Notes under the pieces: model-generated
Told to the model about the DNA's origin: nothing
The model's database searches: none
Seen by the model: the letters and a program-made list of their open reading frames with translations, nothing else
Shown here: one piece after another, positions 9,487 through 22,548 of the stretch
How positions within the stretch are numbered: the first letter of the stretch is position 1
Layout of the letters: every line of letters begins with the position of its first letter
Made by a program: the position numbers and the translations under genes
Origin: Rebecca billardiae RCC1528
Lineage: Eukaryota > Protista > Haptophyta
NCBI GenBank assembly: GCA_965240325.2
Contig: OZ251245.1
Location: 1,054,001 to 1,118,000 of the forward strand
Direction of reading: 5' to 3'
Length of the DNA: 64,000 bases

Positions 9487-9698
9487 GATGGCGCGTGATG
9501 TGACGATGAGGGTGTTTGCCGTCGGTCCAGGGCTCTCTAGACTGCTCCTGACCAGCGGCCGCCCCGGCGGCCGGGGGCGGTTTCAGCATTGTAAGACACC
9601 ACTAATAGATGATACTGTACAGTCACGTACTACTAATACTTACTAGATGATACGTATGTATGATAGTAGTACGAACGGTCCGTCGATACAGCCGAATC

Positions 9699-10952
9699 AT
9701 GGGGCCGCCCCGATGGTGGCTCCGCCTGTCCGCGTGCGCATTGCTGGCGGGGATGGCGTGCTCGGCGGGGGCGCCCGGCAACGCGTCGGCGCCCGGCGGC
9801 AGCGTGCCGCTCCTCCCCGCCACGGTGCACATCGGCCCGTATAAGACGGGCTCGAGCGCCCTGCAGTTTGCGATGCGCGATGGCGGGCGACTGCGGCGGC
9901 TCGCCGAGGTGGAGGACGGCCTCGACGCTGCGAGGCTGTCCGTTGGGTTGCTTGGCGGGCACTTAGCGCTCGCCGCCGTGCTGTGGCACAGGCACAGCGA
10001 CGAGACCCTCGCCGGGCCGCGCGCGCCGGCCGCCTGGCGCGAGTTTGTGCGCGCCGTCGAGTCGGCGAGCGAGGCGCGGCGCGCGCTTCTCCTCTCCTCC
10101 GAGACCTTCTGCGACGAGCGCACGCAGCCGCGGCCGCTGCTGGCCGCGCTCGCGCCGGCCTTCGACGTGCGCGTGGTCGTCGTGTACCGCCGCGTCTTCG
10201 ACTGGCTCGTGTCCATGCACCAGCAGCTGTACCGCACGGACGGCTGGACGCTCACCAGAGTCATGGACGTGGCCCGCGCCGCGCGCAACCACCGCACGCT
10301 CGGCGCGTGGCTTAACGCCGGGGGCAAGTGGGACAGCGCGCGGGGGGCGTTCAGGCAAGCGTGGGCGCGCACCGGGTACGACGCGTGGAGCCGCGCCGGT
10401 GCGCGCGTCACCGTGCTCAACGTGCACCAGGGCGCCGAGGCGCCGCTGCTGCAGCAGTTTGTGTGCGGCCCAATGCGCGCGCCGGTCGCGTGCGCGTGGC
10501 TGCGCGAGAGCGCTGAGGGCCGGGCGATCGCGCGCCGGCGCGAGAACGCCGGCGAGTCGGTCGAGCGCCGCTACGTGGCGGACATTGCCTTCGCCGCCGT
10601 GCAGGCGGGCCAGGTGCCCTCCGCCGCGCTCGAGCGCAACGTCACCAACACGACGCACTTCATCGACCGGCTGCTCGACGCGCGGCGGCGCGCAGGCGCG
10701 GTGGGCGCAGGCGATCTGCCGCTCGCGTGCGCGTCCGAGGCCGAGCTCGAGTGGGTGTGGCAGCTGAGCGTTCGCGAGGAGGCGCGGCTCGTGCCTGAGT
10801 GGCACGACGCCGCCCGGCTGCGCGGCGCGTACGAGGCGGCGCTCAACTCGACGGCCTTCTGCTGGGCGGACACGGCCGTGGCGCTACGAAAGGGTGGCGC
10901 GTGGCTCGCTGCCCTCCGTGGCCGTGCCGTCGGCGCATCGCCAGAACGATAA
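9699..10952 (+). CDS. Secretory-pathway sulfotransferase-like P-loop protein
   Basis: Signal/anchor peptide followed by VHIGPYKTGSSALQ (PAPS-binding-type motif), LLLSSETF and VVVVYRR..DWLVS. Confidence 0.7.
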   Translation: MGPPRWWLRLSACALLAGMACSAGAPGNASAPGGSVPLLPATVHIGPYKTGSSALQFAMRDGGRLRRLAEVEDGLDAARLSVGLLGGHLALAAVLWHRHSDETLAGPRAPAAWREFVRAVESASEARRALLLSSETFCDERTQPRPLLAALAPAFDVRVVVVYRRVFDWLVSMHQQLYRTDGWTLTRVMDVARAARNHRTLGAWLNAGGKWDSARGAFRQAWARTGYDAWSRAGARVTVLNVHQGAEAPLLQQFVCGPMRAPVACAWLRESAEGRAIARRRENAGESVERRYVADIAFAAVQAGQVPSAALERNVTNTTHFIDRLLDARRRAGAVGAGDLPLACASEAELEWVWQLSVREEARLVPEWHDAARLRGAYEAALNSTAFCWADTAVALRKGGAWLAALRGRAVGASPER

Positions 10953-11221
10953 TAGCCTGACACTGAGTCAGCGCGATGTATGGATCCGCGGTCCGCGGAT
11001 CATAAACGCGTATGGGCACTGCCACCGCGCATGTGCTGACACTGCTGCTGATGCTGGTCCCTTCCTCGGTGACGCGCGTGGCGAGAGCGAGGAGTCCTGC
11101 TTATTGAGTTATGCTCATGAGGGCTGGTGCGTGGTAAAAATATTTTCCTGATTTCGTTCCGGTTCCGAGGCAGCGTTTCTGGCAAGTTTACTAGCGCTCG
11201 CGCCCGCACGATGGCGGCCTG

Positions 11222-12681
11222 ATGAATGCTTGGTGTCGAGCATTGACGACCATCGTGCTCGCGTTCACGGCGCCCGCGCGGTCGATGGAGCTCTGGCTGG
11301 ACTGCCGCCGAGCAGCCCCCGCCCCGACGCCGTCCGCACCCACGGCTCGCCCCCCGAGTGTCGAGCTGCTGCGCACCAGCTCCGCGTTCGATCGGCTCGT
11401 CGTGAACGCGGGCGAGCATGTCGACGAGCGCGAGCTCGGCGGCGCGTCGGTGCTGGAGGTGGCGTCGAGCGCCGACGGCGCGGGTGGCGCGGGTGGGGCG
11501 TGCAGGCTCGTGGACGCCGCGTCGCGCGCGCTCCTCGGCGCCTCCGTGCCCTGCCACTCGCCGGACGACCAGGGCCACGCGCTCGCTCTCGTCGGCTCTG
11601 TCGCGTGGCTGCATGTGGACGCAGGTCGAACGGGCTTCCCGTTCATCTCAAGCGAGAACCTGCTCGGCGCGGCGGAGGGGACGGGGACGCAGGTCGCCGT
11701 CACAGTCTCCTCCGCCGCGGACGTGCCGGGCCTCGCCTTCGCCCTCGAGCGGGGCGTCGACGCGCTCGTGTGCCCGCGCGACGCGAGCGCCGCGCTGCTC
11801 GAGGCGCTGCAGATCGCCAAGGCGCAGCGGCTCGAGCGCGCGGAGGCGGCGGCGGGCGGCGAGCAGCGCGCCGGCGCGGGGGACGGCGCGGGGGCGGGGG
11901 CGCTCGCGCTCGAGCCGGCGCGCGTCACCGCCGTCGTCGACGGCGGCGTCGCCGACCGCGTCGCCGTCGACTTCACGCGACTGCTGGCGGCAGAGGAGGG
12001 CTGCTTGGTGGGCTCGTCCGCCAAGGCGCTGGCGTTCGTGCACGGCGAGACGGTGCAGTCCGGCTTCGTGCCGCCGCGGCCGTTCCGGTGCAACGCCGGG
12101 CCCGTCCATGCGTGTACGCGCGCGCGCGCGCGCCCTGCCCGTGCGCCCCGCGCGCGCGCGCACGCCCGCGCCTGACCGCGCCGCCGCGCCGCGCTGCGAC
12201 GCCGCTGGCGGCGGCCGCAGACGTGCGGATGGCGGACGGCAGCTGCAAGTACCTGAGCGAGCTGTGCGCTGGCGACCGCGTCCTCATCGCGAGCGTGGCG
12301 GGCGGTGCGCCGGCGGAGGCGACCGTTGGGCGGTGCAAGGTCGAGCCCCGGCCCACCCTGCGCGTGGAGTTTGCGGCAGCAGCGGCTGCAGCGGACGCGC
12401 AAGGCGTGGCCGCGGCCGGGGCGGGCGCGGGCGCGGCGGCGGGGGGCGGGGGGCGGCGGGGGCAGCTCTTCCTGCAGCAGGCCGAGACGGTGCGCCTGGG
12501 GACCACGCAGGCTGGCGCTGGCGACGAGAGCCAGCAGCCTTCGACGGCGCCGCGAGCAGAGGCCATCACGGCCGGGCTGCCCGTGACCGCTGCGCGGCCG
12601 GGCGACACGATCCTCGTGCGATGGGCGGACAAGGGAACGCACGTGGGCAAAGACATCGCCGCACGTGTGAGCGAGCGCTGA
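11222..12681 (+). CDS. 3-dehydroquinate synthase II family (archaeal AroB'-type) protein; intron 12114-12220
   Basis: ADRVAVD, EGCLVGS, VHGET...PPRPFRCNAGPVHA|Y, KYLSEL.AGD, VGRCKVEPRP, LQQAETVRL, GTHVG. Splicing restores the conserved NAGPVHAY motif across two frames. Confidence 0.9.
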
Positions 12682-13092: not shown

Positions 13093-13954
13093 CAGGTGCA
13101 TCTAATCTCCCGTAACGGTCGAGCACCCCTCGCTAGGCGAGGGGTGCGGCGGAAACGACAGTGGAAACCCGGGGACTTTGTCCCCGCGCCCCTATCGCGG
13201 GCTCTGGCGCGCGAACGCTTTGTCACTACTGGATCCCCGAGGTGGAGAGCGGCGCTCCGTGCACCAACAAAGACATCCCCAGCCGCATGTTGCCACTCGA
13301 CACCTCGTCTCGCCTCGCGCGGAGCCAACTTGTGGTGTGCGGGAGCCACCCGTAGCACACTGGGCCGTGTAGCGACGCGCGTGGCGGGTCAACAGTGCAT
13401 CGCGAAGGCGTCGCACGCGCAATCCGTTGAGTACATACTCATGTCTGTCCCATGGCACGTCGTGCGCCGCCGCGTGCGCCGATGCACTCCCGACTCGCGA
13501 CGCGCCGCGTGCAGCACAGCCTGTGCTTCGGGTAGCTCCCGCACACCACAAGTTGGCTCCGCGCGAAGCGAGACGAGGTGTCGACAGGCGGTGCATGACG
13601 TGCCATGGGACAGACATGAGTATGTACTCAACGGATTGCGCGTGCGACGCCTTCGCGATGCACTGTTGACCCGCCACACGCGTCGCTACACGGCCCAGTG
13701 TGCTACGGGTGGCTCCCGCACACCACAAGTTGGCTCCGCGCGAGGCGAGACGAGGTGTCGAGTGGCAACATGCGGCTGGGGATGTCTTTGTTGGTGCACG
13801 GAGCGCCTATCTCCGGCTCGGAATCCAGTAGTGACAAAGCGTTCGCGCGCCAGAGCCCGCGATAGGGGCGCGGGGACAAAGTCCCCGGGTTGCCACTGTC
13901 CTTTCTGTTGGCAGAGCGACCCGCCGGCCGTTACAGGGCCATTAGAAGGCGGTG
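13093..13954. mobile_element. Non-autonomous foldback/MULE-like element with long TIRs and 9-bp TSD AATAAAGAT
   Basis: Near-perfect inverted arms ~13157-13470 and ~13586-13900. Degenerate outer IR (ca....c.tctaat..ccc.gtaacgg) at both termini. AATAAAGAT at 13084-13092 and 13955-13963. Confidence 0.8.
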
Positions 13955-14071
13955 AATAAAGATTGTGGTGATACACGGTAGGTACCGTAGTAGTGTAACG
14001 ACCGAAGAAACTGCTGGCCGGCCGGCCGGCACTGAACAGGCGAAGACGTGGACTGAGCTGCCGCCGGCCTG

Positions 14072-15688
14072 ATGCTGTCCGTCCTCATCCTCGCGCTGCC
14101 GGTGCTCGCCCTCCGCCCCGGCGCGCCGGCGCCGCTCGGCCGCGCGCGCTCGGCCGTGTGCGTGCACGCTGGTGGCACGCTCCAGCCCAGGCCCACGGCG
14201 CCGCGCTCCTTCGACGGGCTTCGCCCGTTGGTCGAGTCGTTGCCCGCGGAGGCGGAGCTGCCCGGCATGATCGTCTTCGACCTGGACAACACGCTGTGGA
14301 CGCCGGAGCTGTACACGCTGCGTCGGCTGAAGGGGTACGCGGACGCCTCGCCCCCCGGCCCGACCGCCTGGCGAGACGTCTGGCTCGTCGACGGCGCGGC
14401 CGACGTGCTGCACGAGCTCGCGACCAGCGAGCGCTGGCAGGCGGCGGGCACGGTCCTGGCGGTCGCGTCGCGCACGACGAAGGGGCCGTGGGCGCGCTCG
14501 CTGCTGGCGCAGTTCGAGGTGCCCGGCGTCCCGCGCACCAACGGCCGCGCGCCCACCCTCGACGCCCTCCTGCCCTTCAAGCAGATCCGCCGCGGCGACA
14601 AGAGCGCGCACGTGCGCGCGCTCTCGGCCGAGTCGGGCGTTCCGTGCGAACGCATGCTTTTCTTCGATGACGCGCGCGGCGGGCGGTACGGCAACTGCGA
14701 GCCGGTGGCGCGGTTGGGCGTGCTCGCCGTGCACACGCCGCAGGGGCTCACGCGCGAGCTCTTCGCGCTCGGGCTCGCCGAGTACGCGCGGCGGCGGCAC
14801 CGCGGCCTGCCGACCGGCGGTGTGCTGCCTCAGCTGGCGGAGGGCGAGGAGACGGAGGCGGCCGGGGCGGGCGCGGGCGGCGTGGCGGGCGAGGCGCACG
14901 TTGCGGAGGCGAGGCTGTGGGGCGCGGACCCGGCGGAGGGCGTCGTGCGCAGCTGGCTCGAGGACCGCGGCTTCGGCTTCGTCCGCCTCGGCCGCGCCGA
15001 CATCTTCTTCCATTCCTCCGCGATCGTGGGCGGCGCCGAGCCGGCGCCGCGGCCGGGCGAGCGCGTGCGCGTGCGCGTGCGCGACGCGGCCGACGGGCGG
15101 CGCGAGTGCGAGCGCGTCGAGCGCGTGGAGCCGGGCGGCGGCGCGCGGCCGACGGGCGTGCCGACGGTGCGGATGCGCTGCTTCTCGATGAACATGCCCT
15201 TCGCCGCGCTCCTTGGCCACGGGTACAAGTCGCTCGAGACGCGCAACGGCACCATGTTTGCGCAGGGCGCGCGGCCGGGCGAGCGGCTGCTGCTGCACGT
15301 CGGCCGCCGGATCTACCCGGACGGCGGCGCGCACAAGGAGCTGATGCGCGCGCACGGCGCGAGCGAGGCGGAGATCCGCGAGCTCACCTCGCTGCCGCAC
15401 GGCTTTGGCCGCGGCCAGATCGTCGCCGTGCTCGAGCTCGGCGAGACGCAGCTCATGTCGGACGAGCGCGCGCGCTGCGCCCCCGAGGTCGAGCGCAGGG
15501 TCGTGGCGACCGGCCAGGCGATGGGCCGGTACCTGACGGAGGTGGTGCGCGCCGAGTGGCTGGAAGAGCCCGTGCCGATGCGCGGGCAGCCGGGGATCTT
15601 CGACGTCGAGATCCCGGCCGCGGCACTGCCCGATGGCTGGCGCGCCGCCGCCGCCGACACTGGCGGCGGCAGCAGAGCTAGCAGATGA
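14072..15688 (+). CDS. MDP1-type HAD phosphatase + cold-shock domain + ASCH (EOLA1-like) fusion with N-terminal targeting peptide
   Basis: IVFDLDNTLW, LAVASRT and MLFFDD (HAD IIIC/MDP1); GVVRSWLEDRGFGFV...DIFFHSS (RNP1/RNP2 of CSD); CFSMNMPFAALLGHGYKSLETR...P.PMRGQPGIF (ASCH). Confidence 0.85.
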   Translation: MLSVLILALPVLALRPGAPAPLGRARSAVCVHAGGTLQPRPTAPRSFDGLRPLVESLPAEAELPGMIVFDLDNTLWTPELYTLRRLKGYADASPPGPTAWRDVWLVDGAADVLHELATSERWQAAGTVLAVASRTTKGPWARSLLAQFEVPGVPRTNGRAPTLDALLPFKQIRRGDKSAHVRALSAESGVPCERMLFFDDARGGRYGNCEPVARLGVLAVHTPQGLTRELFALGLAEYARRRHRGLPTGGVLPQLAEGEETEAAGAGAGGVAGEAHVAEARLWGADPAEGVVRSWLEDRGFGFVRLGRADIFFHSSAIVGGAEPAPRPGERVRVRVRDAADGRRECERVERVEPGGGARPTGVPTVRMRCFSMNMPFAALLGHGYKSLETRNGTMFAQGARPGERLLLHVGRRIYPDGGAHKELMRAHGASEAEIRELTSLPHGFGRGQIVAVLELGETQLMSDERARCAPEVERRVVATGQAMGRYLTEVVRAEWLEEPVPMRGQPGIFDVEIPAAALPDGWRAAAADTGGGSRASR

Positions 15689-17660
15689 CGCGCCACCGCG
15701 CCCCACCACGATGATCGGTGCACGATGACGGGCCGTCCGGCCCAGATGGCGGCAACGCCGGTGACGGCGGTGTTGAGGATGCCGTGCCCCGCCGGTGGCC
15801 GTGGCGGTGGCGTGGCGCGATCGGGCCGTCCGCCGCGGTGGGAAACACGGTACGGTGGCCGCGATGCGCGCCCGCGTCCGTGTCACTTGTTGCGGGTCTC
15901 GAGCCAGCGCCGTTGTGGCTTTGTGCAACCACTGCTGTGACTAGCACAGTACGTGCCACTGGGCGCAGGAATTTCGGGTGGGGGGTTTCTTTTCCGAATA
16001 TGTCGGTGATGCCGTCAGAGCACCACCAACCTCTGCCGCTGGCGGCTGCGCTGACAGCGCCGGCGCTGGGCGGCAGCCGGAGCCGGCGATACGGGCGCCG
16101 ACTCGGCGCGCACTCCTGCGGTAGCTGCGTGACCGCGAAGGCGGGTGCGCGTGGTTGAGCGCGGCTGAAGAGCAGCCATTTGCGTCGTTCCGCTGCGCGC
16201 CGTTCGGAGTCACTGCATCCGTCGCGCCTCAGGCAATCGCGTGCGCCGCAACAACAAGCAGGAAGTCGTGCGCATTACATCCGGGCCTCACAGCCGTGCT
16301 CCGGGACACACTCTGCCACTGCACGCGAGTGCCGCAAGCCGAGCGGCGCCTCGGCGTCCGGCACTAAGTTATGGTTATTGCACTACTGGGCATGCAATGA
16401 TGCCCAGGTATTACAGTTTATGCACGCGTCATCGCTCGTCACAGTACGACGCTGCCTGGCATGCGCATGCGGTGCACGGGTCACACAGCCGTCAAATTAA
16501 TTAAAGGCACGATCGAGCATCCGAGTGCCATCCGACGGCCGCAGCTGTCGCCGTCGGCCATCGTCACATCGTCGGCGCCACGGCTACTCGACGGCGCGGC
16601 TCCGGGACTGGCTTGAGTCCGTGTGAGCCACTTGGCGCGGAAAGTAACTGACTAGCTGAATGCGCCCTTCTGGATAGTCGGATGTAGCAGTGAGCACGTG
16701 CCCGCGTGAAAGGAGCGCGCGCCATTCCGGCACCGGACGCGGCGTCGGGGCTGGATGCTCACGTCTTGGGCAGGCTGACGATGCTGCCTTCCGTCTGTCA
16801 CACGATTCCGCGCGATGCCAGTCGGGCCACCGCGAGCCTCCTGCCGGCCCCGCGTCAGGGGGCCGTCCGCCACGGCGCCAGTGGCCAGTTCAGGCCGCCA
16901 CCGTACTAGGCCCGGAGTCAGACCGTTGTCAGCACCTTGTCCTTAGTGACCCGTACCGAGTACCGTACTCCGTAGAGTCAGACAATCAGTCAGTCGGACC
17001 GTACTCCGTAGTCGTACAGGCCGGTACAGGCAATCGCGGGCAATAAGAAGTCAGAGATCTCACGGCTAGTCTCGGTTTCTTAGCCGTTCGGTAGCCCGAG
17101 CGCCTACGGAGTCTCAGTTTCTTAGCTAGGTCCGCCCGCCGCGCAGGCGCGGCCGGGGGCGCCGCAGGGGGGCAGAGCCCCCCGCTGAGGGCTTTAGGCC
17201 CGGCCGGCGAGGCCGAAGAAAAATTTGGGCCATCATTTTGGAGCAAATCTGACATGATGTTGCATGGAGGCTGCGGTGCACTGGCCAGGAGTCAGTCATC
17301 AGGAGAAGTCTGGACTTGGCCTGTCGTACTCGTACGGTCGCGGGGCCGCGCGCCGCGTCCCACGGGCCGACTGCGCCTCGGCGGACCACTCGTCAGCCGC
17401 GACGACGTAGTCCCGGTTTCTTAGTGTGACTATATGCGTATAGCGAACCAGCCAATCGCTAGTCTCAGTTTCTAGGCCAGATCCGCAGATAGCAAGCCCC
17501 AGTTTCTTAACGTGACAGCTCCTTATTGCCCGCGATTGCCTGTAGTCCAGTAGTACGCGTAGTACGCCATTGACACGGGTACGGCAGCAGGCGCCATCAC
17601 TGCGCCAGTACTGCGCGCACGGCCTGCGCCAGAGCCCTGCGCTGCTGGCTCGAGATCCAT

Positions 17661-18971
17661 TCAAAACTTGACCCGGTACACGGCAATCGGCTCGCCGTAG
17701 TCCGTGTGCCCCAATACGCGCACCCGCTCGATCACGCCCCGGGAGACGAGCTGCTCGGCGACGCCGGGCCACTTGACCATCAAGTCGAGCGAGAGGATGA
17801 ACTCCTCCCGCTTGAGGCCCGACTTGGAGTAGCCCCTGTCCGGTGTGGAGATGGGTGTCCAGCCCTGGTTGGCGTAGTCACCTGGCCCTGCGCCGAGCGC
17901 TATGCACCGCTCGCGCAGAACGGCGGCGCCGAGGTGGTCGCTGTACAGCGCCCAGACCGCCAGCTCGCCCTGGCTGTGGTTGTTGACCTGCTTGTTCAGC
18001 CGCACGGGCAGAGCCACCCGCCGCACGTCCACCTCCAGCGCCACCTGGTTGCGCATCCAGCTCGCGCCGGGCATGAACACGACGCCGGGGCCGAAGGCGC
18101 CGGGGGCCACCGCCAGGCGCTGCGCCGCGCCCGCATCCAGCCCGCGCAGCTCGGCGAGCTGCGCGCGGAACGCGCTCACCAGGCTGGTGACGGCCTGGCG
18201 CGAGGCCGCGTCCGCGAGCGCGGGCACGTCCACGCCCGGCTGTGAGAGCTTGTGCAGCGTGTCCACGTCCTCCTCGGCGAGCTCGAGCGGCTTGAGCAAG
18301 CACGCGTGGAAGCTGGGGTCCTTGGCTGCGTGCGCGAGCGTCTGCCCGTTGCTCCTGACAATGGCCCCGAGCTCGCGCACGCGCGAGCGCACGAGGCACG
18401 ACGCCGCGAGCGCGCGCCGGTACAAGCTCCGCACCAGCTCGGCGCCGCCGATCATCGCCGCGCCTCGGAACGCGTCGCCCGCGTCGTCCAGCGCGCGCAC
18501 GTACCACGGCTCGGCCGCACTCCCGGTCAGAGTCGACGCGTGGCCGAGCGCGCACGCTGCGAGGTTGAGGAAGAATGTGGTGCTGGTGCCCAACGTGTGG
18601 CCCGACCGAACGAGGTGCCGCTGCGCATCACATGCCTTGTGCGCGGCTTCGTACTTGCCCGCGGCGTGGAGCCGCGCGGCGCTGTCCAGAGCGGACGCGA
18701 GCTCGGGGATGCTCTCGAAGCCCACGGCAAGCGGCAGCTCGGCCCACTCGCGGTCGACAAGCTCGGAAGCCGCAGGAACAGGGGCACCGCCCGCCGCGCT
18801 CGAAGCGCCTGCCGGTGGCGCCGCGCTCTCGGCGCGCCGTGGCGACGGCGTGTGCCCGAGGCACTCCATACAGCGTCGCTCAGCCACCCGCTTCTTCATC
18901 TGCTTGTTCGTGAACGCCTCCGCGGGCAGTGTGCGCGCGCACGCCGCGCAAACCACGCCGGCCATCGACAT
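17661..18971 (-). CDS. Hypothetical protein: N-terminal C4 zinc finger, TPR-like helical region, globular C-terminal domain
   Basis: CAAC...AFTNKQMKK...CMEC; helical repeats (AGKYEAA, FLNLAAC, SLYRRALA). Confidence 0.65.
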   Translation of the reverse strand: MSMAGVVCAACARTLPAEAFTNKQMKKRVAERRCMECLGHTPSPRRAESAAPPAGASSAAGGAPVPAASELVDREWAELPLAVGFESIPELASALDSAARLHAAGKYEAAHKACDAQRHLVRSGHTLGTSTTFFLNLAACALGHASTLTGSAAEPWYVRALDDAGDAFRGAAMIGGAELVRSLYRRALAASCLVRSRVRELGAIVRSNGQTLAHAAKDPSFHACLLKPLELAEEDVDTLHKLSQPGVDVPALADAASRQAVTSLVSAFRAQLAELRGLDAGAAQRLAVAPGAFGPGVVFMPGASWMRNQVALEVDVRRVALPVRLNKQVNNHSQGELAVWALYSDHLGAAVLRERCIALGAGPGDYANQGWTPISTPDRGYSKSGLKREEFILSLDLMVKWPGVAEQLVSRGVIERVRVLGHTDYGEPIAVYRVKF

Positions 18972-19188
18972 CCTTCCCGACGGCGACGAGGTTATTACTT
19001 ACTTGCGCGCTGTATTCGAAGAACTCTACGCGTTCTCATTGTCAGGATCATCATCAGAAGTGAGCAGTGTGACATGGCTTAGTCAACTCACACTCGCAAC
19101 ACTGAACACACGCGACGACGATACTCAGTCTGCTGACGCTATGCGTGCGCACACACGACGATGGCACGGGCCACGGCGTGGCGGTACG

Positions 19189-20240
19189 TCATCCCTTTTG
19201 CTTCTTCTTCTGCGCCTGCACGAACTCGTCGATCGCCGAGCGCAGCGCCACGTTGGGCACGAGCACCTGGTCCTTTTTGGGGATGCTCACGTTTGAGAGT
19301 GGGTCGGTGCTGTGCGTGCGCAGCCACGTGGCGATCGCCTCGCGCTCGTACGTGTTGCCCGAGCCGACGAGCACCACCGGATCCCGCATGATCTCGCCCG
19401 TGATCGAGCACACGTACGCCGCGGGGATGTCCGCCTCGTCGAGGCTCAGGTCCCGGAGCGCGGCGTCGAGCGCCGAGCCCCCGAGCCCGCTCACGACGGT
19501 CGGGCCCGCGCTCGGCGCGGGCGCCGGCCCGACCGGCCGCGCGACGGCGGTGGGCGGCGCGCCGGCGGACGAGCGCGACGGGTCGATCGCGACACCGTGC
19601 ACCACGGGCCGCGAGCCCACGCTGTGCGCGCTCTGCCGCAGCTGCTCGCGCGGATCATCCCAGGTGGTCCGCCTGGAGGTGGCGGGCGCGCGGCGGCGGG
19701 CGGGGCGGCGCGGCGCGAGGCGGTCGGGCGGCGGTTGGGCACGGCTCGGGGGCTGCGCGCGGCGCGCGTGGGCGGCGCGCCGCGCCTCGGCTCGCGCCGG
19801 CTGGTAGGTACGCTCGCGCCGCGCACCTGGTCGAGTGGTCCACAAAGTACTTGCGGCCCTGCGCGGTCGTCGCCTCCTCCCAGCCGTAAGGCAGCGGCTG
19901 TCCCACGCATCGCGGCGCGCGCGCAGAGGGCCAGGGACGGGCGCGGGCGCGTGAGCGGCGGCGGCGGGCGCAGGGACGTGGGCATCGGGTAGGACGGCAG
20001 CGTGCACGTCGCCTCGACCACGCGCCCGCGCCGCGCACGCACCGGCTCCCAGTGTGTGGAGCGCGTGTTGTGATCGAGGTAGTACGGACGGCCGTCTGCC
20101 GTGTACGCGAGCTCCCATCCGCTGGGCAGCTGGTAGCTCGCGCCGACGGCGGGGGTCTGCGTGGTCGATGCGGGTGGCGCCAGGGGCTGCGGCGCCCGTG
20201 GCGCCGGGTTGCTCGAGCCCGAGCGCCCCCACCAAGGCAT
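19189..20240 (-). CDS. WW-WW-U-box E3 ubiquitin ligase; introns 19898-20042 and 19673-19826
   Basis: LPSGWELAYTADGRPYYLDHNTRSTHWEP and LPYGWEEATTAQGRKYFVDHSTR|RTTWDDP (WW x2); YVCSITGEIMRDPVVLVGSGNTYEREAIATWL...DPLSN...LVPNVALRSAI (U-box). Confidence 0.9.
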
Positions 20241-20478
20241 CTGCCGCGTGGAGCGGTGCGTGCGGACCACCAAAAGTGGGGCGCCTGACGGCGGATGGCG
20301 GACTTTCCTGGCAATTGCACATTGGCCAACCGAAAGGTCCGGCCGCCGCGCCGGACCGTGCCGGTCCGGCTGGGCGCCAATGATCCGGACCGCGCATCCT
20401 CTTGAACCTGCGCCCTCGACTCGAAAAAACGCTCGCGGCCTCGCGCGTCCGACGCCCGGTCTTGTCCACTCCGCCCAG

Positions 20479-22548
20479 ATGGACGAGCCCGCGCGCAAGC
20501 TCATGCGCGAGCCCGTCGAGGACGTGGCGCTCCGGATCCTCCGCGCGTGCGCCTGGCGCGAGCGCACCCACCTGCTCTGCCTCAACCGCGCGTGGGCCGC
20601 CCTGCAGCGCAGCGCGGTGCGCGACTGGTGCCTCGAGCTCGAGGAGCGTTCGATGCTGTACGTGCCGGGGCCGCCGCCGGGGCGCCAGCGCACGCCGGCG
20701 GAGTGGCGCGAGCTGCTGCGCCAGCTGCGCGCGAGCGAGCATGTCTGGAACCCCCAGCCGCCCGCCGCCGGCGAGGCCGCGCCCGCGCGCAAGGTTCGGA
20801 TGCGCGTGTGCGCGCGCTTCCGCCCGCGCAAGCGCGGCGACGCCGCCGCCGCCGCTGATCAGAAGGCGGCGGAGGAGGCGTCGGCGGAGGCGCCGGGCAG
20901 CACGCAGCGCGTGGTGCTCCCGCTGCACCAGCGCCTCCAGCTCATCCGCGCCTCGAACAAGTGCTCCGCCTCCGAGGCGCAGCGGCTGCTCTGGGCGGGC
21001 GGCGCGGCGGGCAACGACCCGTTCTCGGCTCCAAAGGGAATGGCGGAGCTGGCGCTGTCCGACGTGACCAACGTGGAGCCCGCGGGCGCGCACGGCCCGG
21101 CCGGCCCCGCGCACAAGAAGCCCGCGCCCGCGCCCGCCGCCGACGGCTGCGCCGACGCGGCGGCCGCGCACGCCGCCGCGGCCAGCAGCACGAGCGCAGG
21201 CGTCGTGGCGCTCACCGACTCGTCCGTCGTGTTCTGCGCGCCCACGATCGGGCTGCGCGAGTTCTGCTACACGGCGGCGCTGGGCCCCGCGGCGCCGCAG
21301 CCCGCCGTGTACGAGGCCACCGTGCGCCAGCTCGTCGTCGACCTGCTCAACGGCAGCTCGGGCTGCCTGCTCGCGTTCGGGCAGACAGGCTCGGGCAAGA
21401 CCTTCTCAGTGTCGGGCGCGGACGAGGCGGCGGCGACGAGCGTCAGGTGCGGCGGCGCGGGGCTTGGGGAGCGCGCCGGGCTGGTGCCGCGCGCGCTGCG
21501 CGAGCTGCTCTCCGCGCTCTCCGCGCGCCGCGCGTCCCTCGGCATCCACTCCACCCTCCGCCTCTCGGCGGTGGAGGTCTTCGGGGACAACGTGCTCGAC
21601 CTTCTCAAGGAGGGCGAGGCGCTGGGCGCGTGGAGGGGCGTCGCGGCGCGCGCGCTCGCGAGCGGGCACGCGGACATGCCGGTGGGCTCTGCGGAGGAGG
21701 CGAGCGCGCTGCTGCTCCGCGCCGAGCGCACCAAGCGCCGCGCCGCCACGGCAATGAACGAGCACTCGTCGCGCGCGCACACGGTGCTCACGCTCACGCT
21801 CGCGCAGACGTCGGCTGACGGGCTCGAGCTCACGTCGACCCTCTGCCTCGCCGACCTCGGCGGCTCGGAGCAGCTCAAGCGCTCGGGCGCGACGGGCGAG
21901 CGGCTGCGCGAGGCGGTCAATATTAACCTCGGCCTGCTCGCGCTCAAGAGCTGCGTCACCGCGCTCACGGAGGGCCGCAGGTGCGAGCGCGCGCGCGCGC
22001 GTGCGCGCTGCGCGCGCACTCGCATGCGCGCAGGGCGCAGGCGCGCGCCGCGCGCCGCACCCCTCACTGAGACGCGCGGCGCCGCCCCGCCCGCCACGCC
22101 GTGCGCCCGCAGCCACGTGCCCTTCCACAACTCGGCGCTGACGCAGCTGCTGCGCCCGGCGCTCTCAGGCGCCGCGCAGGCGGTCGTCCTCGTGTGCGCG
22201 TCGCCCGACCCGGTCGACGCGAGCGAGACGCTCGAGGCGCTGCGCTTCGGCGAGCTGGCCGCGGTGGTGGAGGGCGAGGCGCGGCGGCACAGCCCTGCCG
22301 CGCTAATGGCGGAGACGCTGCGCGCGCTCGACGCGCGGATCGACGCGGTGCAGGCGGCGGTCGTGGCGAAGGAGCGCTGGGAGCAGCGCGTCGAGACCGT
22401 GCGCGACGAGCGCGCCGAGGGCCTCGTCGACACGGGCGTGGAGCAGAAGAAGACCTTTCGGCTGGTCGGCGCGGAGGCGGAGCGCGCCGAGCTCGAGGAG
22501 CTGCTCGCGCGCCGGCGCGAGCTCGTCGGGGATGCGGGCGAGCCGTGA
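20479..22548 (+). CDS. Kinesin motor protein with N-terminal F-box-like motif; intron 21981-22112
   Basis: MRVCARFRP, AFGQTGSGKTFS (P-loop), NEHSSRAH (switch I), DLGGSE (switch II), HVPF.NSALTQLL, ETLEALRFG, and a C-terminal coiled coil. Confidence 0.92.
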   Translation: MDEPARKLMREPVEDVALRILRACAWRERTHLLCLNRAWAALQRSAVRDWCLELEERSMLYVPGPPPGRQRTPAEWRELLRQLRASEHVWNPQPPAAGEAAPARKVRMRVCARFRPRKRGDAAAAADQKAAEEASAEAPGSTQRVVLPLHQRLQLIRASNKCSASEAQRLLWAGGAAGNDPFSAPKGMAELALSDVTNVEPAGAHGPAGPAHKKPAPAPAADGCADAAAAHAAAASSTSAGVVALTDSSVVFCAPTIGLREFCYTAALGPAAPQPAVYEATVRQLVVDLLNGSSGCLLAFGQTGSGKTFSVSGADEAAATSVRCGGAGLGERAGLVPRALRELLSALSARRASLGIHSTLRLSAVEVFGDNVLDLLKEGEALGAWRGVAARALASGHADMPVGSAEEASALLLRAERTKRRAATAMNEHSSRAHTVLTLTLAQTSADGLELTSTLCLADLGGSEQLKRSGATGERLREAVNINLGLLALKSCVTALTEGRRCERARARARCARTRMRAGRRRAPRAAPLTETRGAAPPATPCARSHVPFHNSALTQLLRPALSGAAQAVVLVCASPDPVDASETLEALRFGELAAVVEGEARRHSPAALMAETLRALDARIDAVQAAVVAKERWEQRVETVRDERAEGLVDTGVEQKKTFRLVGAEAERAELEELLARRRELVGDAGEP

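What the first reader, a model, noticed from the sequence alone, without database searches (positions are those of the whole stretch)
14072..15688. Organelle-targeted MDP1 phosphatase-cold shock-ASCH three-domain fusion
Seen: a single exon encodes a signal peptide and an Arg/Pro/Ala-rich transit-like stretch, then a HAD IIIC phosphatase with intact DxD and FFDD, a CSD, and an ASCH domain with GxKxxExR. Known: CSD and ASCH bind nucleic acids, the E. coli ASCH protein YqfB hydrolyses N4-acetylcytidine, and MDP1 is normally a stand-alone phosphatase. Inference: a possible plastid RNA end-healing/turnover or modified-nucleotide salvage enzyme. I do not recognise this architecture as characterised.
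Basis: partly seen in the sequence, partly recalled or inferred. Interest (0 to 1): 0.7.

Follow-up and report, generated by a model that had tools for sequence, protein, structure and literature searches.

The report
Algal phosphatase, cold-shock, ASCH fusion enzyme
This is a real, unbroken algal gene that joins an MDP-1-type phosphatase, an RNA-binding cold-shock domain and an EOLA1-type ASCH domain behind a plastid-style targeting signal. The fusion is conserved in haptophytes, diatoms and their relatives, has been noted in one preprint but never studied, and probably recycles or detoxifies acetylated cytidine nucleotides released by RNA breakdown.

Summary
Window 14072-15688 (+) is one 538-aa open frame with 95.5% GC at third codon positions.

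- **Domains.** It has an Acid_PPase/MDP-1-type HAD phosphatase (Pfam E 3.7e-29) with all four catalytic motifs. It has a cold-shock domain: weak by Pfam, clear by motifs and fold. It has a C-terminal ASCH domain that Pfam misses but that matches solved EOLA1/CXorf40 (E 6e-18, TM 0.85). EOLA1's Ser, Lys, Glu and Arg pocket residues are invariant.
- **Distribution.** Over 300 relatives turned up. The named ones come from haptophytes, pelagophytes, a raphidophyte, diatoms and Chromera. Two complete MMETSP transcripts carry motifs of all three domains. Eight of 120 lack the cold-shock domain, so phosphatase plus ASCH is the core.
- **Targeting.** Many relatives begin with a signal peptide followed by Phe, the diatom plastid motif. 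This protein's N-terminus resembles the PsbO and PRK presequences of its own genome.
- **Prior work.** A 2026 preprint (Relier et al.) shows that EOLA1 deacetylates free N4-acetylcytidine and mentions ASCH fusions to an S1-like domain and a HAD phosphatase. The architecture is therefore noted but uncharacterised.

Best reading (about 45%): a plastid two-step enzyme that dephosphorylates and deacetylates acetylated cytidine nucleotides. The genome shows no plastid acetyltransferase, and no RNA run was listed.

The parts
14072..15688 (+). Whole coding sequence, 538 aa plus stop, with no interruption
   Evidence: GC3 95.5%, in-frame stop 6 codons upstream. Searches show a public 2056-bp contig identical to and collinear with window 13927-15982.
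14072..14176 (+). Presequence, aa 1-35. It has a hydrophobic signal-peptide-like core (aa 1-14, MLSVLILALPVLA|L) followed by an Arg/Ala/Pro-rich transit-like stretch.
   Evidence: Hydropathy is 3.08. pLDDT is below 50 for aa 1-3 and 14-35. The sequence resembles the PsbO (MLRTFTLVALAASAGA|LKSGPARSAF) and PRK (…ACQASA|YSAVSRSALRR) presequences of the same genome. Among homologues, 33 of 64 with a hydrophobic N-terminus have small-x-small|Phe, against 6.3 expected.
14177..14257 (+). Conserved N-terminal extension of the mature protein, aa 36-62, beginning just after the GGTLQPRP motif. It is modelled with high confidence, so it probably belongs to the folded protein.
   Evidence: The GGxLQPRP motif is shared by haptophyte-type homologues and Chromera. 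pLDDT is 91-96 for aa 41-60.
14258..14791 (+). HAD phosphatase domain of the Acid_PPase/MDP-1/HAD-IIIC type, aa 63-240. Motif I is D70-L-D72-N-T74, motif II is S133/T135, motif III is K177 and motif IV is D199-D200.
   Evidence: Pfam, NCBIfam. (human and mouse MDP-1, 2wm8 and 1u7o, E 3e-10). (TM 0.77-0.80). (invariant residues).
14792..14935 (+). Low-complexity Ala/Gly/Glu-rich linker, aa 241-288
   Evidence: pLDDT is below 50 for aa 256-282. This stretch varies in length among homologues.
14936..15124 (+). Cold-shock (OB-fold) domain, aa 289-351, with RNP1-like RGFGFV and RNP2-like IFFH
   Evidence: PF00313, below cut-off. (Csp structures, TM 0.8-0.88). G302, F303, F312 and F313 are at least 90% conserved. 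The domain is absent in 8 of 120 homologues.
15164..15646 (+). EOLA1-type ASCH domain, aa 365-525. The pocket residues are S372, K386, E389 and R391, equivalent to EOLA1 S7, K21, E24 and R26.
   Evidence: EOLA1/CXorf40, E 6e-18, with alignment. (TM 0.85). (K386, E389, R391 invariant; S372 at least 90%).

Best explanation
The gene encodes a nucleus-encoded bifunctional enzyme that is probably imported into the plastid. It would dispose of or recycle N4-acetylcytidine (or a closely related N4-acylated cytidine) released when RNA is degraded.

Proposed mechanism:
1. The presequence (aa 1-35) takes the protein through the ER-derived outer membranes into the plastid and is then removed.
2. The EOLA1-type ASCH domain takes the modified base into its Ser/Lys/Glu/Arg pocket and hydrolyses the N4-acetyl group. 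This yields a normal cytidine moiety plus acetate.
3. The MDP-1-type HAD domain removes the phosphate from the same mononucleotide or short fragment. The modified nucleotide therefore cannot be re-phosphorylated and re-incorporated, and the product can enter pyrimidine salvage.
4. The cold-shock domain is an accessory single-stranded-RNA handle that keeps the enzyme on decay intermediates. It is optional, since several lineages have lost it.

Shown here: the domain identities, the intact catalytic residues, conservation of the fusion, and presequence features.

Inferred: the substrate, the order of the two reactions and the compartment.
For: ASCH domain. It is an EOLA1 relative by sequence (E 6e-18) and by fold (TM 0.85). 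S372, K386, E389 and R391 align with EOLA1 S7, K21, E24 and R26; three are invariant and S372 is at least 90% conserved in 95 homologues. Relier et al. 2026 report that human EOLA1 deacetylates free ac4C/ac4CTP and unstructured ac4C RNA, and that R26A abolishes activity. Statkeviciute et al. 2026 show that Lys and Glu are essential.

Phosphatase. All four HAD motifs are invariant or nearly so, so the phosphatase is under selection as a catalyst.

Fusion. More than 300 homologues were found. The named ones span haptophytes, pelagophytes, a raphidophyte, diatoms and Chromera. Two complete MMETSP transcripts carry motifs of all three domains. The cold-shock domain is missing in 8 of 120, in at least three separate clades. 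HAD and ASCH are never separated in this set. This is the pattern expected for two steps of one pathway. [quoted passage not shown]

This is the only EOLA1-like domain detected in the 72-Mb genome.

Targeting. See the presequence evidence.

From my own knowledge, not tested here: mammalian MDP-1 prefers furanose 5- or 6-phosphates N-linked to a bulky group (protein fructosamine-6-phosphate, ribulosamine-5-phosphate, ribose-5-phosphate). That is chemically close to a nucleoside 5'-monophosphate.
Against: - No enzyme assay exists for any member of this fusion family.
- The genome shows one NAT10-type acetyltransferase and no TmcAL, so no dedicated plastid ac4C writer is evident.
- A review of chloroplast tRNAs reports unmodified C34 in plastid tRNA-Met and only an indirect report of ac4C in rice chloroplast lysate.
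- The function of EOLA1 itself is contested. One study found murine EOLA1 inactive on free ac4C (reported). Another preprint makes it a mitochondrial translation factor that binds 12S rRNA and TUFM.
- The phosphatase fails the MDP-1 equivalog cut-off, and its substrate is unknown.
- AlphaFold gives no confident arrangement of the domains (pTM 0.54 for this protein and 0.60 for a natural two-domain relative). There is therefore no structural sign of substrate channelling.
- The residue after the predicted signal-peptide cleavage is Leu, not Phe.
- No targeting predictor and no RNA evidence were available.
Confidence: 0.45

Rival explanations
1. It works on RNA rather than on nucleotides. The cold-shock and ASCH domains bind plastid tRNA or rRNA (or their fragments). 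The ASCH domain erases ac4C in the polymer. The HAD domain removes a terminal phosphate, for example a 3'-phosphate left by endonucleases, as the HAD domain of polynucleotide kinase-phosphatase does.
For: Statkeviciute et al. 2026 report that 19 ASCH proteins, EOLA1 included, lower ac4C in tRNA. EOLA1 deacetylates unstructured ac4C RNA in vitro. The cold-shock domain keeps its RNP1- and RNP2-like aromatic residues and is present in 112 of 120 homologues. Relier et al. mention 'RNA termini' as a possible HAD substrate.
Against: The cold-shock domain has been lost repeatedly without loss of the rest. Relier et al. found that cellular rRNA and tRNA ac4C is refractory to EOLA1. The HAD domain is of the MDP-1 type, not the PNKP type. 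No plastid ac4C writer was detected.
Confidence: 0.2
2. It is a factor of organellar translation rather than a salvage enzyme. Like mammalian EOLA1 in mitochondria, it would bind the small-subunit rRNA and EF-Tu of the plastid's bacterial-type ribosome. The phosphatase would have a regulatory role.
For: Shi et al. [quoted passage not shown] The algal protein is likewise aimed at an organelle with bacterial-type translation and carries an added RNA-binding domain.
Against: Strict conservation of the catalytic residues of both enzyme domains is not explained by a purely binding role. The mitochondrial claim is a single preprint and disagrees with the cytosolic, ribosome-proximal picture of Relier et al..
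Confidence: 0.1
3. The compartment is wrong. The hydrophobic N-terminus is only an ER signal or a membrane anchor, and the enzyme works in the secretory or vacuolar system, or outside the cell. There it would dephosphorylate and deacetylate nucleotides produced by RNase T2-type RNA breakdown, for nutrient scavenging.
For: This protein has Leu, not Phe, after the predicted cleavage site. Several haptophyte-type homologues pass from the hydrophobic segment almost directly into the conserved GGxLQPRP motif, with little room for a transit peptide. The Pfam family name is 'acid phosphatase'.
Against: Ochrophyte homologues carry the canonical ASA|F-type motif far above chance (33 observed against 6.3 expected). 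PsbO of this same genome also has Leu at the +1 position and a similar short R/A/S/P-rich stretch.
Confidence: 0.15
4. It repairs damage to something other than ac4C. The MDP-1-type domain would keep MDP-1's known role, removing phosphate from sugar-phosphate adducts on amines (glycation by Calvin-cycle sugar phosphates). The ASCH domain would hydrolyse or recognise another N4 adduct on cytosine. Alternatively, the HAD domain dephosphorylates the conserved pocket serine of its own ASCH domain as an in-cis switch.
For: From my own knowledge, MDP-1's best-documented substrates are protein-bound fructosamine-6-phosphate and ribulosamine-5-phosphate. Plastids are rich in reactive sugar phosphates and acetyl-CoA. 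Relier et al. found about 44% phosphorylation of EOLA1 S7 inside the pocket, and the equivalent S372 is conserved here.
Against: There is no direct evidence. EOLA1 was specific for ac4C over m5C and m6A. Neither variant of this idea explains the usual presence of a nucleic-acid-binding cold-shock domain.
Confidence: 0.08

Closest known systems
Human and mouse EOLA1 (CXorf40A), PDB 5y7d, 6kir, 9kyi
   Same: It has the same ASCH beta-barrel (TM 0.85, about 30% identity). It has the same GxKxxExR motif with Glu, and the same pocket Ser. EOLA1 is reported as an ac4C deacetylase.
   Different: EOLA1 is a stand-alone protein of about 160 aa. Here the domain is the C-terminal third of a 538-aa protein with a phosphatase, a cold-shock domain and an organelle presequence. 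D417 and H421 are invariant in the fusion family but do not appear conserved in the EOLA1 alignment.
E. coli YqfB (ASCH, ac4C amidohydrolase)
   Same: It shares the fold class and the reaction type, as reported.
   Different: YqfB has Thr where this protein has Glu (GKTR against GKER type). It belongs to a different ASCH clade according to Relier et al.. It was not recovered by sequence search here.
Mammalian magnesium-dependent phosphatase 1 (MDP-1), PDB 2wm8, 1u7o, 1u7p
   Same: It is the same HAD subfamily (PF12689, TIGR01681) with all four catalytic motifs. E is 3e-10 and TM 0.77-0.80.
   Different: This protein is below the MDP-1 equivalog cut-off. It carries invariants absent from the aligned MDP-1 sequences (W76-T-P-E-L-Y after motif I, and G204..G207-N208-C209 after motif IV). 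It also has a conserved N-terminal extension and is fused to nucleic-acid-related domains.
TRIP4/ASC-1 ASCH domain, PDB 8yfj, 9kyl, 8alz
   Same: It belongs to the same Glu-type ASCH clade and is a multidomain protein with nucleic-acid contacts.
   Different: The structural match is much weaker (TM 0.6-0.67, 15-17% identity). TRIP4 carries zinc-finger and PWI-like modules and acts in ribosome quality control. It has no phosphatase.
Polynucleotide kinase-phosphatase (PNKP and T4 Pnkp), recalled from knowledge
   Same: It has a HAD-type DxDxT phosphatase linked to nucleic-acid end processing. It is the model for the 'end-healing' reading.
   Different: It is a different HAD subfamily. PNKP is joined to a kinase, not to an ASCH domain. 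It did not appear among the structural matches.
Bacterial CspA/CspB cold-shock proteins
   Same: It has the same five-stranded OB fold and RNP1/RNP2-like motifs (TM 0.8-0.88).
   Different: Here it is an internal domain that scores below the Pfam cut-off and is dispensable in some orthologues.

Membership tests
HAD superfamily, Acid_PPase / HAD-IIIC (PF12689, TIGR01681) | Score above the curated cut-offs | tested here: met
   PF12689 scores 102.2 bits against a cut-off of 27. TIGR01681 scores 36.4 against 35.75, which is marginal.
HAD superfamily, Acid_PPase / HAD-IIIC (PF12689, TIGR01681) | Four catalytic motifs: DxDxT, S/T, K and DD | tested here: met
   D70, D72, T74, K177, D199 and D200 are invariant. 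S133 and T135 are at least 90% conserved in 95 sequences.
MDP-1 proper (TIGR01685 equivalog) | Score above the equivalog cut-off | tested here: not met
   It scores 34.6 bits against 53.75. It is therefore a divergent relative of MDP-1, not an orthologue. A better MDP-1-like gene lies elsewhere in the genome (C3, 126 bits to PF12689).
MDP-1 proper (TIGR01685 equivalog) | Mg-dependent phosphatase activity on sugar-phosphate or protein-bound substrates | not testable with these tools
   This needs an enzyme assay.
Cold-shock domain (PF00313) | Score above the gathering cut-off | tested here: not met
   It scores 20.4 bits in the whole protein and 23.8 on the isolated piece, against a cut-off of 27. 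Most homologues do carry the precomputed PF00313 hit.
Cold-shock domain (PF00313) | OB fold with RNP1 and RNP2 aromatic motifs | tested here: met
   GFGFV and IFFH are present. The Foldseek TM to Csp structures is 0.8-0.88. pLDDT is about 90.
ASCH domain (PF04266) | Match to the Pfam model | tested here: not met
   There is no hit even at E 10 on the isolated C-terminal piece.
EOLA1-like (Glu-type, TRIP4-like clade) ASCH proteins | Sequence and fold similarity to EOLA1 | tested here: met
   E is 5.6e-18 to 6kir. TM is 0.85 and rmsd 2.2-2.3 over 156-159 columns.
EOLA1-like (Glu-type, TRIP4-like clade) ASCH proteins | GxKxxExR motif with Lys, Glu and Arg, plus the upstream pocket Ser/Thr | tested here: met
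   K386, E389 and R391 are invariant and S372 is at least 90% conserved. The equivalence to K21, E24, R26 and S7 comes from the alignment.
EOLA1-like (Glu-type, TRIP4-like clade) ASCH proteins | N4-acetylcytidine amidohydrolase activity | not testable with these tools
   This needs an enzyme assay.
Bipartite plastid-targeting presequence of algae with red complex plastids | N-terminal signal peptide with a hydrophobic core | tested here: met
   The mean hydropathy of an 11-residue window at aa 4-14 is 3.08. Of 78 full-length homologues, 64 have such a segment. This is a simple measure, not SignalP.
Bipartite plastid-targeting presequence of algae with red complex plastids | Phe, Trp, Tyr or Leu at the first residue after signal-peptide cleavage (ASAFAP-type motif) | tested here: inconclusive
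   This protein reads VLA|L (Leu). The same genome's PsbO has AGA|L and its PRK has ASA|Y. Thirty-three homologues have small-x-small|F against 6.3 expected by shuffling. The cleavage site here is guessed.
Bipartite plastid-targeting presequence of algae with red complex plastids | Import into the plastid | not testable with these tools
   This needs localisation experiments. ASAFind, HECTAR and SignalP were not available.

The most novel reading that the evidence does not exclude
Algae with red-derived complex plastids run a dedicated plastid pathway for N4-modified cytidine. This obligate phosphatase-ASCH fusion would be its enzyme. If so, acetylated (or otherwise N4-modified) cytidine arises in plastid RNA or plastid nucleotide pools even though no plastid acetyltransferase is recognisable. 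The source could be an unknown writer, import of modified nucleotides, or non-enzymatic acylation in an acetyl-CoA-rich compartment. The natural fusion would also give MDP-1-type phosphatases their first nucleotide-linked physiological role. It would help settle which of the three competing 2026 claims about EOLA1 function is ancestral.
Probability: 0.25. Interest if true: 0.7.

Novelty: new variant of a known kind. Interest (0 to 1): 0.5.

Why it matters
EOLA1-type ASCH proteins only acquired proposed functions in 2026, and three preprints disagree. One makes EOLA1 a free-ac4C salvage enzyme, one a tRNA ac4C eraser and one a mitochondrial translation factor. MDP-1-type phosphatases still lack a settled physiological role.

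A fusion of the two is conserved in several major groups of marine phytoplankton, with intact active sites in both halves and an organelle presequence. It is natural 'guilt by fusion' evidence that the two activities belong to one pathway acting on phosphorylated cytidine derivatives.

The idea can be tested directly in transformable diatoms. If confirmed, it would add a step to the poorly known handling of modified nucleotides in plastids. If the protein proves ordinary, the result is still a clean annotation for over 300 database entries. Those that carry a name are currently called 'hypothetical', 'CSD domain-containing' or 'magnesium-dependent phosphatase 1'.

Tried and rejected
1. RNA evidence. 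The look-up of sequencing runs listed no RNA run for 13700-16300. Transcript structure in this organism is untested. The public contig L001 may be DNA or RNA.
2. Pfam ASCH. No hit. The domain was identified through solved structures instead.
3. Stand-alone relatives of the ASCH piece. Only 19 hits, on short contigs and probably mostly fragments. No animal EOLA1 was reached by the word search, so this says nothing about stand-alone algal forms.
4. A second, organellar ac4C writer. One NAT10-type locus and no TmcAL were found. This counts against a plastid ac4C source, but the six-frame search of a nuclear assembly cannot exclude one.
5. Fixed HAD-ASCH docking. pTM is 0.54 for this protein and 0.60 for the natural two-domain relative P0025, despite pLDDT of 86-89. 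There is no support for a rigid composite site. I therefore did not send a complex-prediction job and make no binding claim.
6. Alveolate relatives of the Chromera protein. Its nearest hits are haptophyte-type sequences. No other named alveolate appeared in the 120 listed.
7. The IQ-TREE run did not finish. The tree used is FastTree with local supports only. One row (P0054) was mislabelled 'noCSD' by my distance rule and is not counted.
8. Literature on MDP-1 substrates was not retrievable from the held library. Statements about MDP-1 activity rest on my own knowledge.
9. Earlier notes of this scan near the window or by keyword held nothing relevant.
10. The 665-aa ORF on the minus strand (13931-15928) was rejected as a high-GC artefact.
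Full report
**1. What is there**

Window 14072-15688 (+) is a single 538-aa open reading frame. GC content by codon position is 0.77, 0.56 and 0.955. This is the signature of a true coding frame in a genome of about 70% GC. The longer ORF on the opposite strand (13931-15928) has its GC peak at codon position 1, so it is an artefact of the same gene. An in-frame stop lies six codons upstream of the ATG. Unless an upstream exon is spliced on, 14072 is therefore the start.

A 2056-bp public contig (Logan, ERR14847148) is 100% identical to and collinear with window 13927-15982. No RNA run was listed for the region. The exon structure in this organism thus rests on the unbroken frame and on comparison with relatives. 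I did not use read laying, and I searched no spliced or joined model.

**2. The three domains**

*Phosphatase.* Pfam places aa 63-240 in Acid_PPase (PF12689, E 3.7e-29). NCBIfam places them in HAD-SF-IIIC, just above its cut-off, and below the cut-off of the MDP-1 equivalog. The nearest solved structures are human and mouse MDP-1, at E 3e-10 by sequence and TM 0.77-0.80 by fold. In an alignment of 95 homologues, the HAD motifs are invariant or nearly so: D70-x-D72-x-T74, S133/T135, K177 and D199-D200. The family also has invariants of its own, W76-T-P-E-L-Y and G204..G207-N208-C209, which are absent from the aligned MDP-1 sequences.

*Cold-shock domain.* Residues 289-351 form a cold-shock domain. 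The Pfam score is below the cut-off. The RNP1-like GFGFV and RNP2-like IFFH motifs are present, and the model superposes on bacterial Csp structures at TM 0.8-0.88.

*ASCH domain.* Pfam sees nothing in the C-terminal third. Even so, it matches the solved EOLA1/CXorf40 proteins at E 6e-18, with TM 0.85 and rmsd 2.2-2.3. TRIP4 ASCH domains follow at a distance.

*Model.* The AlphaFold model built on 95 sequences has mean pLDDT 85.8. All three domains are above 90. Residues 1-3, 14-35 and 256-282 are disordered, and pTM is 0.54.

**3. Relatives**

The word-based protein search found 333 proteins. Those with names come from:
- Prymnesium (a haptophyte);
- Aureococcus and Pelagophyceae sp. CCMP2097 (pelagophytes);
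- Heterosigma (a raphidophyte);
- several diatoms (Nitzschia, Cylindrotheca, Attheya, Cyclotella and others);
- Chromera velia.

Two ESM Atlas clusters with the same domains are labelled Haptophyta and Bacillariophyta. Two hits are MMETSP transcripts flagged complete (P0041, P0050), and both carry the sequence motifs of all three domains. In relatives, therefore, the fusion appears in single transcripts.

Eight of 120 homologues have only a short linker between the phosphatase and the ASCH domain and lack the cold-shock motifs. On a FastTree they fall in at least three separate clades (local supports only, midpoint root). Phosphatase plus ASCH is therefore the constant core, and the cold-shock domain is an accessory.

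In the window's own 72-Mb genome, this is the only EOLA1-like domain detected. It is one of four Acid_PPase loci.

**4. Targeting**

The N-terminus has a very hydrophobic segment at aa 4-14 (mean hydropathy 3.08), followed by an Arg/Ala/Pro-rich stretch.

Of 78 homologues that start with Met and have at least 35 residues ahead of the phosphatase core, 64 have such a hydrophobic segment. Of those, 33 follow it with small-x-small|Phe, against 6.3 expected when the downstream residues are shuffled. Examples are VSA|FSP, ASA|FMT, AHA|FVP and VSG|FSP. From established knowledge of diatom protein import (the ASAFAP motif), this marks plastid proteins of algae with red complex plastids.

I also fetched two certain plastid proteins of this same genome as internal comparators. 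PsbO begins MLRTFTLVALAASAGA|LKSGPARSAF. Phosphoribulokinase has …ACQASA|YSAVSRSALRR. The finding's protein, MLSVLILALPVLA|LRPGAPAPLGRARSAV, is of the same style, including Leu at the position after the presumed cleavage site.

The mature protein probably begins near the conserved GGTLQPRP motif. That motif is shared with Chromera and other haptophyte-type homologues, and the residues just after it are modelled with high confidence (pLDDT 91-96 for aa 41-60).

I rate plastid targeting as likely: about two in three for this protein and higher for the diatom orthologues. It is not shown. No dedicated predictor was available, and several haptophyte-type homologues leave very little room for a transit peptide.

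**5. What is known**

- Relier et al. 2026 (bioRxiv 10.64898/2026.08.01.741249) show that human EOLA1 deacetylates free ac4C/ac4CTP and ac4C in unstructured RNA, but not in cellular rRNA or tRNA. They name K21, E24 and R26 as the pocket and S7 as a conserved, phosphorylated pocket residue. In the alignment these correspond to K386, E389, R391 and S372. The first three are invariant and S372 is nearly so.
[quoted passage not shown] The architecture has therefore been noticed, but only in passing and without experiments.
- Statkeviciute et al. 2026 report that ASCH proteins, EOLA1 included, remove ac4C from tRNA, and that Lys and Glu are essential.
- Shi et al. [quoted passage not shown]

The function of EOLA1 is thus currently contested.

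**6. Most likely mechanism**

Both enzyme domains keep their catalytic residues across lineages that diverged long ago. They are never found apart in this set, while the RNA-binding domain between them can be lost. This is the pattern of two consecutive steps of one pathway.

The best-supported activity for the ASCH half is hydrolysis of the N4-acetyl group of cytidine. The natural substrates of RNA decay are phosphorylated (5'-NMPs, NDPs, 3'-NMPs and short oligonucleotides). I therefore propose a two-step clean-up in which the phosphate is removed by the HAD domain and the acetyl group by the ASCH domain. The modified nucleotide cannot then be re-activated and mis-incorporated, and the cytidine can be salvaged. 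The cold-shock domain would hold the enzyme on single-stranded decay intermediates. I give this about 45%.

The weak points are these:
- There is no assay for any member of the fusion family.
- I could recognise no plastid ac4C writer. The genome has one NAT10-type gene and no TmcAL.
- A review of chloroplast tRNAs reports unmodified C34 in plastid tRNA-Met.
- AlphaFold gives no confident arrangement of the domains (pTM 0.54 and 0.60).

The rivals are:
- action on RNA polymers and their ends (about 20%);
- a secretory or vacuolar location (about 15%; this mainly concerns the compartment and could be combined with the same chemistry);
- a role in plastid translation by analogy with the mitochondrial claim (about 10%);
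- other damage-repair or self-regulatory roles of the phosphatase (about 8%).

**7. Novelty and verdict**

The claim that the architecture is unrecognised does not hold. It is widespread in databases under uninformative names, and it is mentioned in a 2026 preprint. What appears new here:
- the evidence for a plastid-type presequence across the family;
- the finding that the cold-shock domain is dispensable;
- the restriction of the named members to haptophytes, ochrophytes and Chromera;
- the absence of a recognisable plastid acetyltransferase.

I class it as a new, uncharacterised variant of known enzyme kinds and score interest at 0.5.

Noticed in passing
window 13152-13905: A 754-bp near-perfect palindrome lies about 170 bp upstream of the start codon. 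Its arms are 235 and 86 nt long, 97% complementary. It is a dispersed foldback-type repeat with at least 23 full-length copies at 92-99% identity on many contigs of the genome, plus many half-length copies. It looks like a recently active non-autonomous transposon. The public contig L001 ends about 20 bp past its edge, at 13927.
   Followed up: partly
G000:C14:2516934-2517458 (L004) and G000:C14:2519646-2520236 (L006): Two tandem stand-alone Acid_PPase genes share the fusion's subfamily marks (W-T/Q-P-E-M-F/Y after motif I, and a Cys-containing insert after motif IV; 33-38% identity). Both begin with hydrophobic, signal-peptide-like N-termini. The fused phosphatase therefore has unfused, probably co-targeted paralogues.
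   Followed up: partly
G000:C3:3161192-3161650 (L003): This is the locus with the strongest Pfam Acid_PPase match in the genome (126 bits to PF12689). It is separate from the fusion.
   Followed up: no
homologue P0038 (Chromera velia) in the tree: The only named alveolate member sits inside the haptophyte-type clade and shares its GGxLQPRP motif. Its nearest hits are haptophyte-type sequences rather than other alveolates. This could reflect gene transfer between lineages with red plastids. It is a FastTree result only, unrooted and not tested further.
   Followed up: partly
window 11195-12172 (+): The neighbouring open frame matches 3-dehydroquinate synthase II (PF01959, E 1e-26). This is the archaeal-type enzyme, an unusual family for a eukaryotic alga.
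   Followed up: no
window 20137-22545 (+): A kinesin motor protein (PF00225, E 7e-63). The open frames at 9651-10949 (+) and 17664-18998 (-) have coding-type GC3 but no Pfam match.
   Followed up: no
G000:C21:672881-673836 (L008/L009): PsbO is split by an intron of about 230 bp, so the genome does have introns. The intron-free state of the 1.6-kb fusion gene is therefore a feature of this gene rather than of the genome.
   Followed up: no
homologues P0005, P0013, P0026, P0034, P0056: In several haptophyte-type homologues, a Met directly precedes the conserved GGG(I/V)(K/L)QPRP motif (MGGGIKQPRP), and the Chromera protein starts there. An internal start could produce a second form without the presequence. 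The window's protein has Ala at that position, so this does not apply to it.
   Followed up: no
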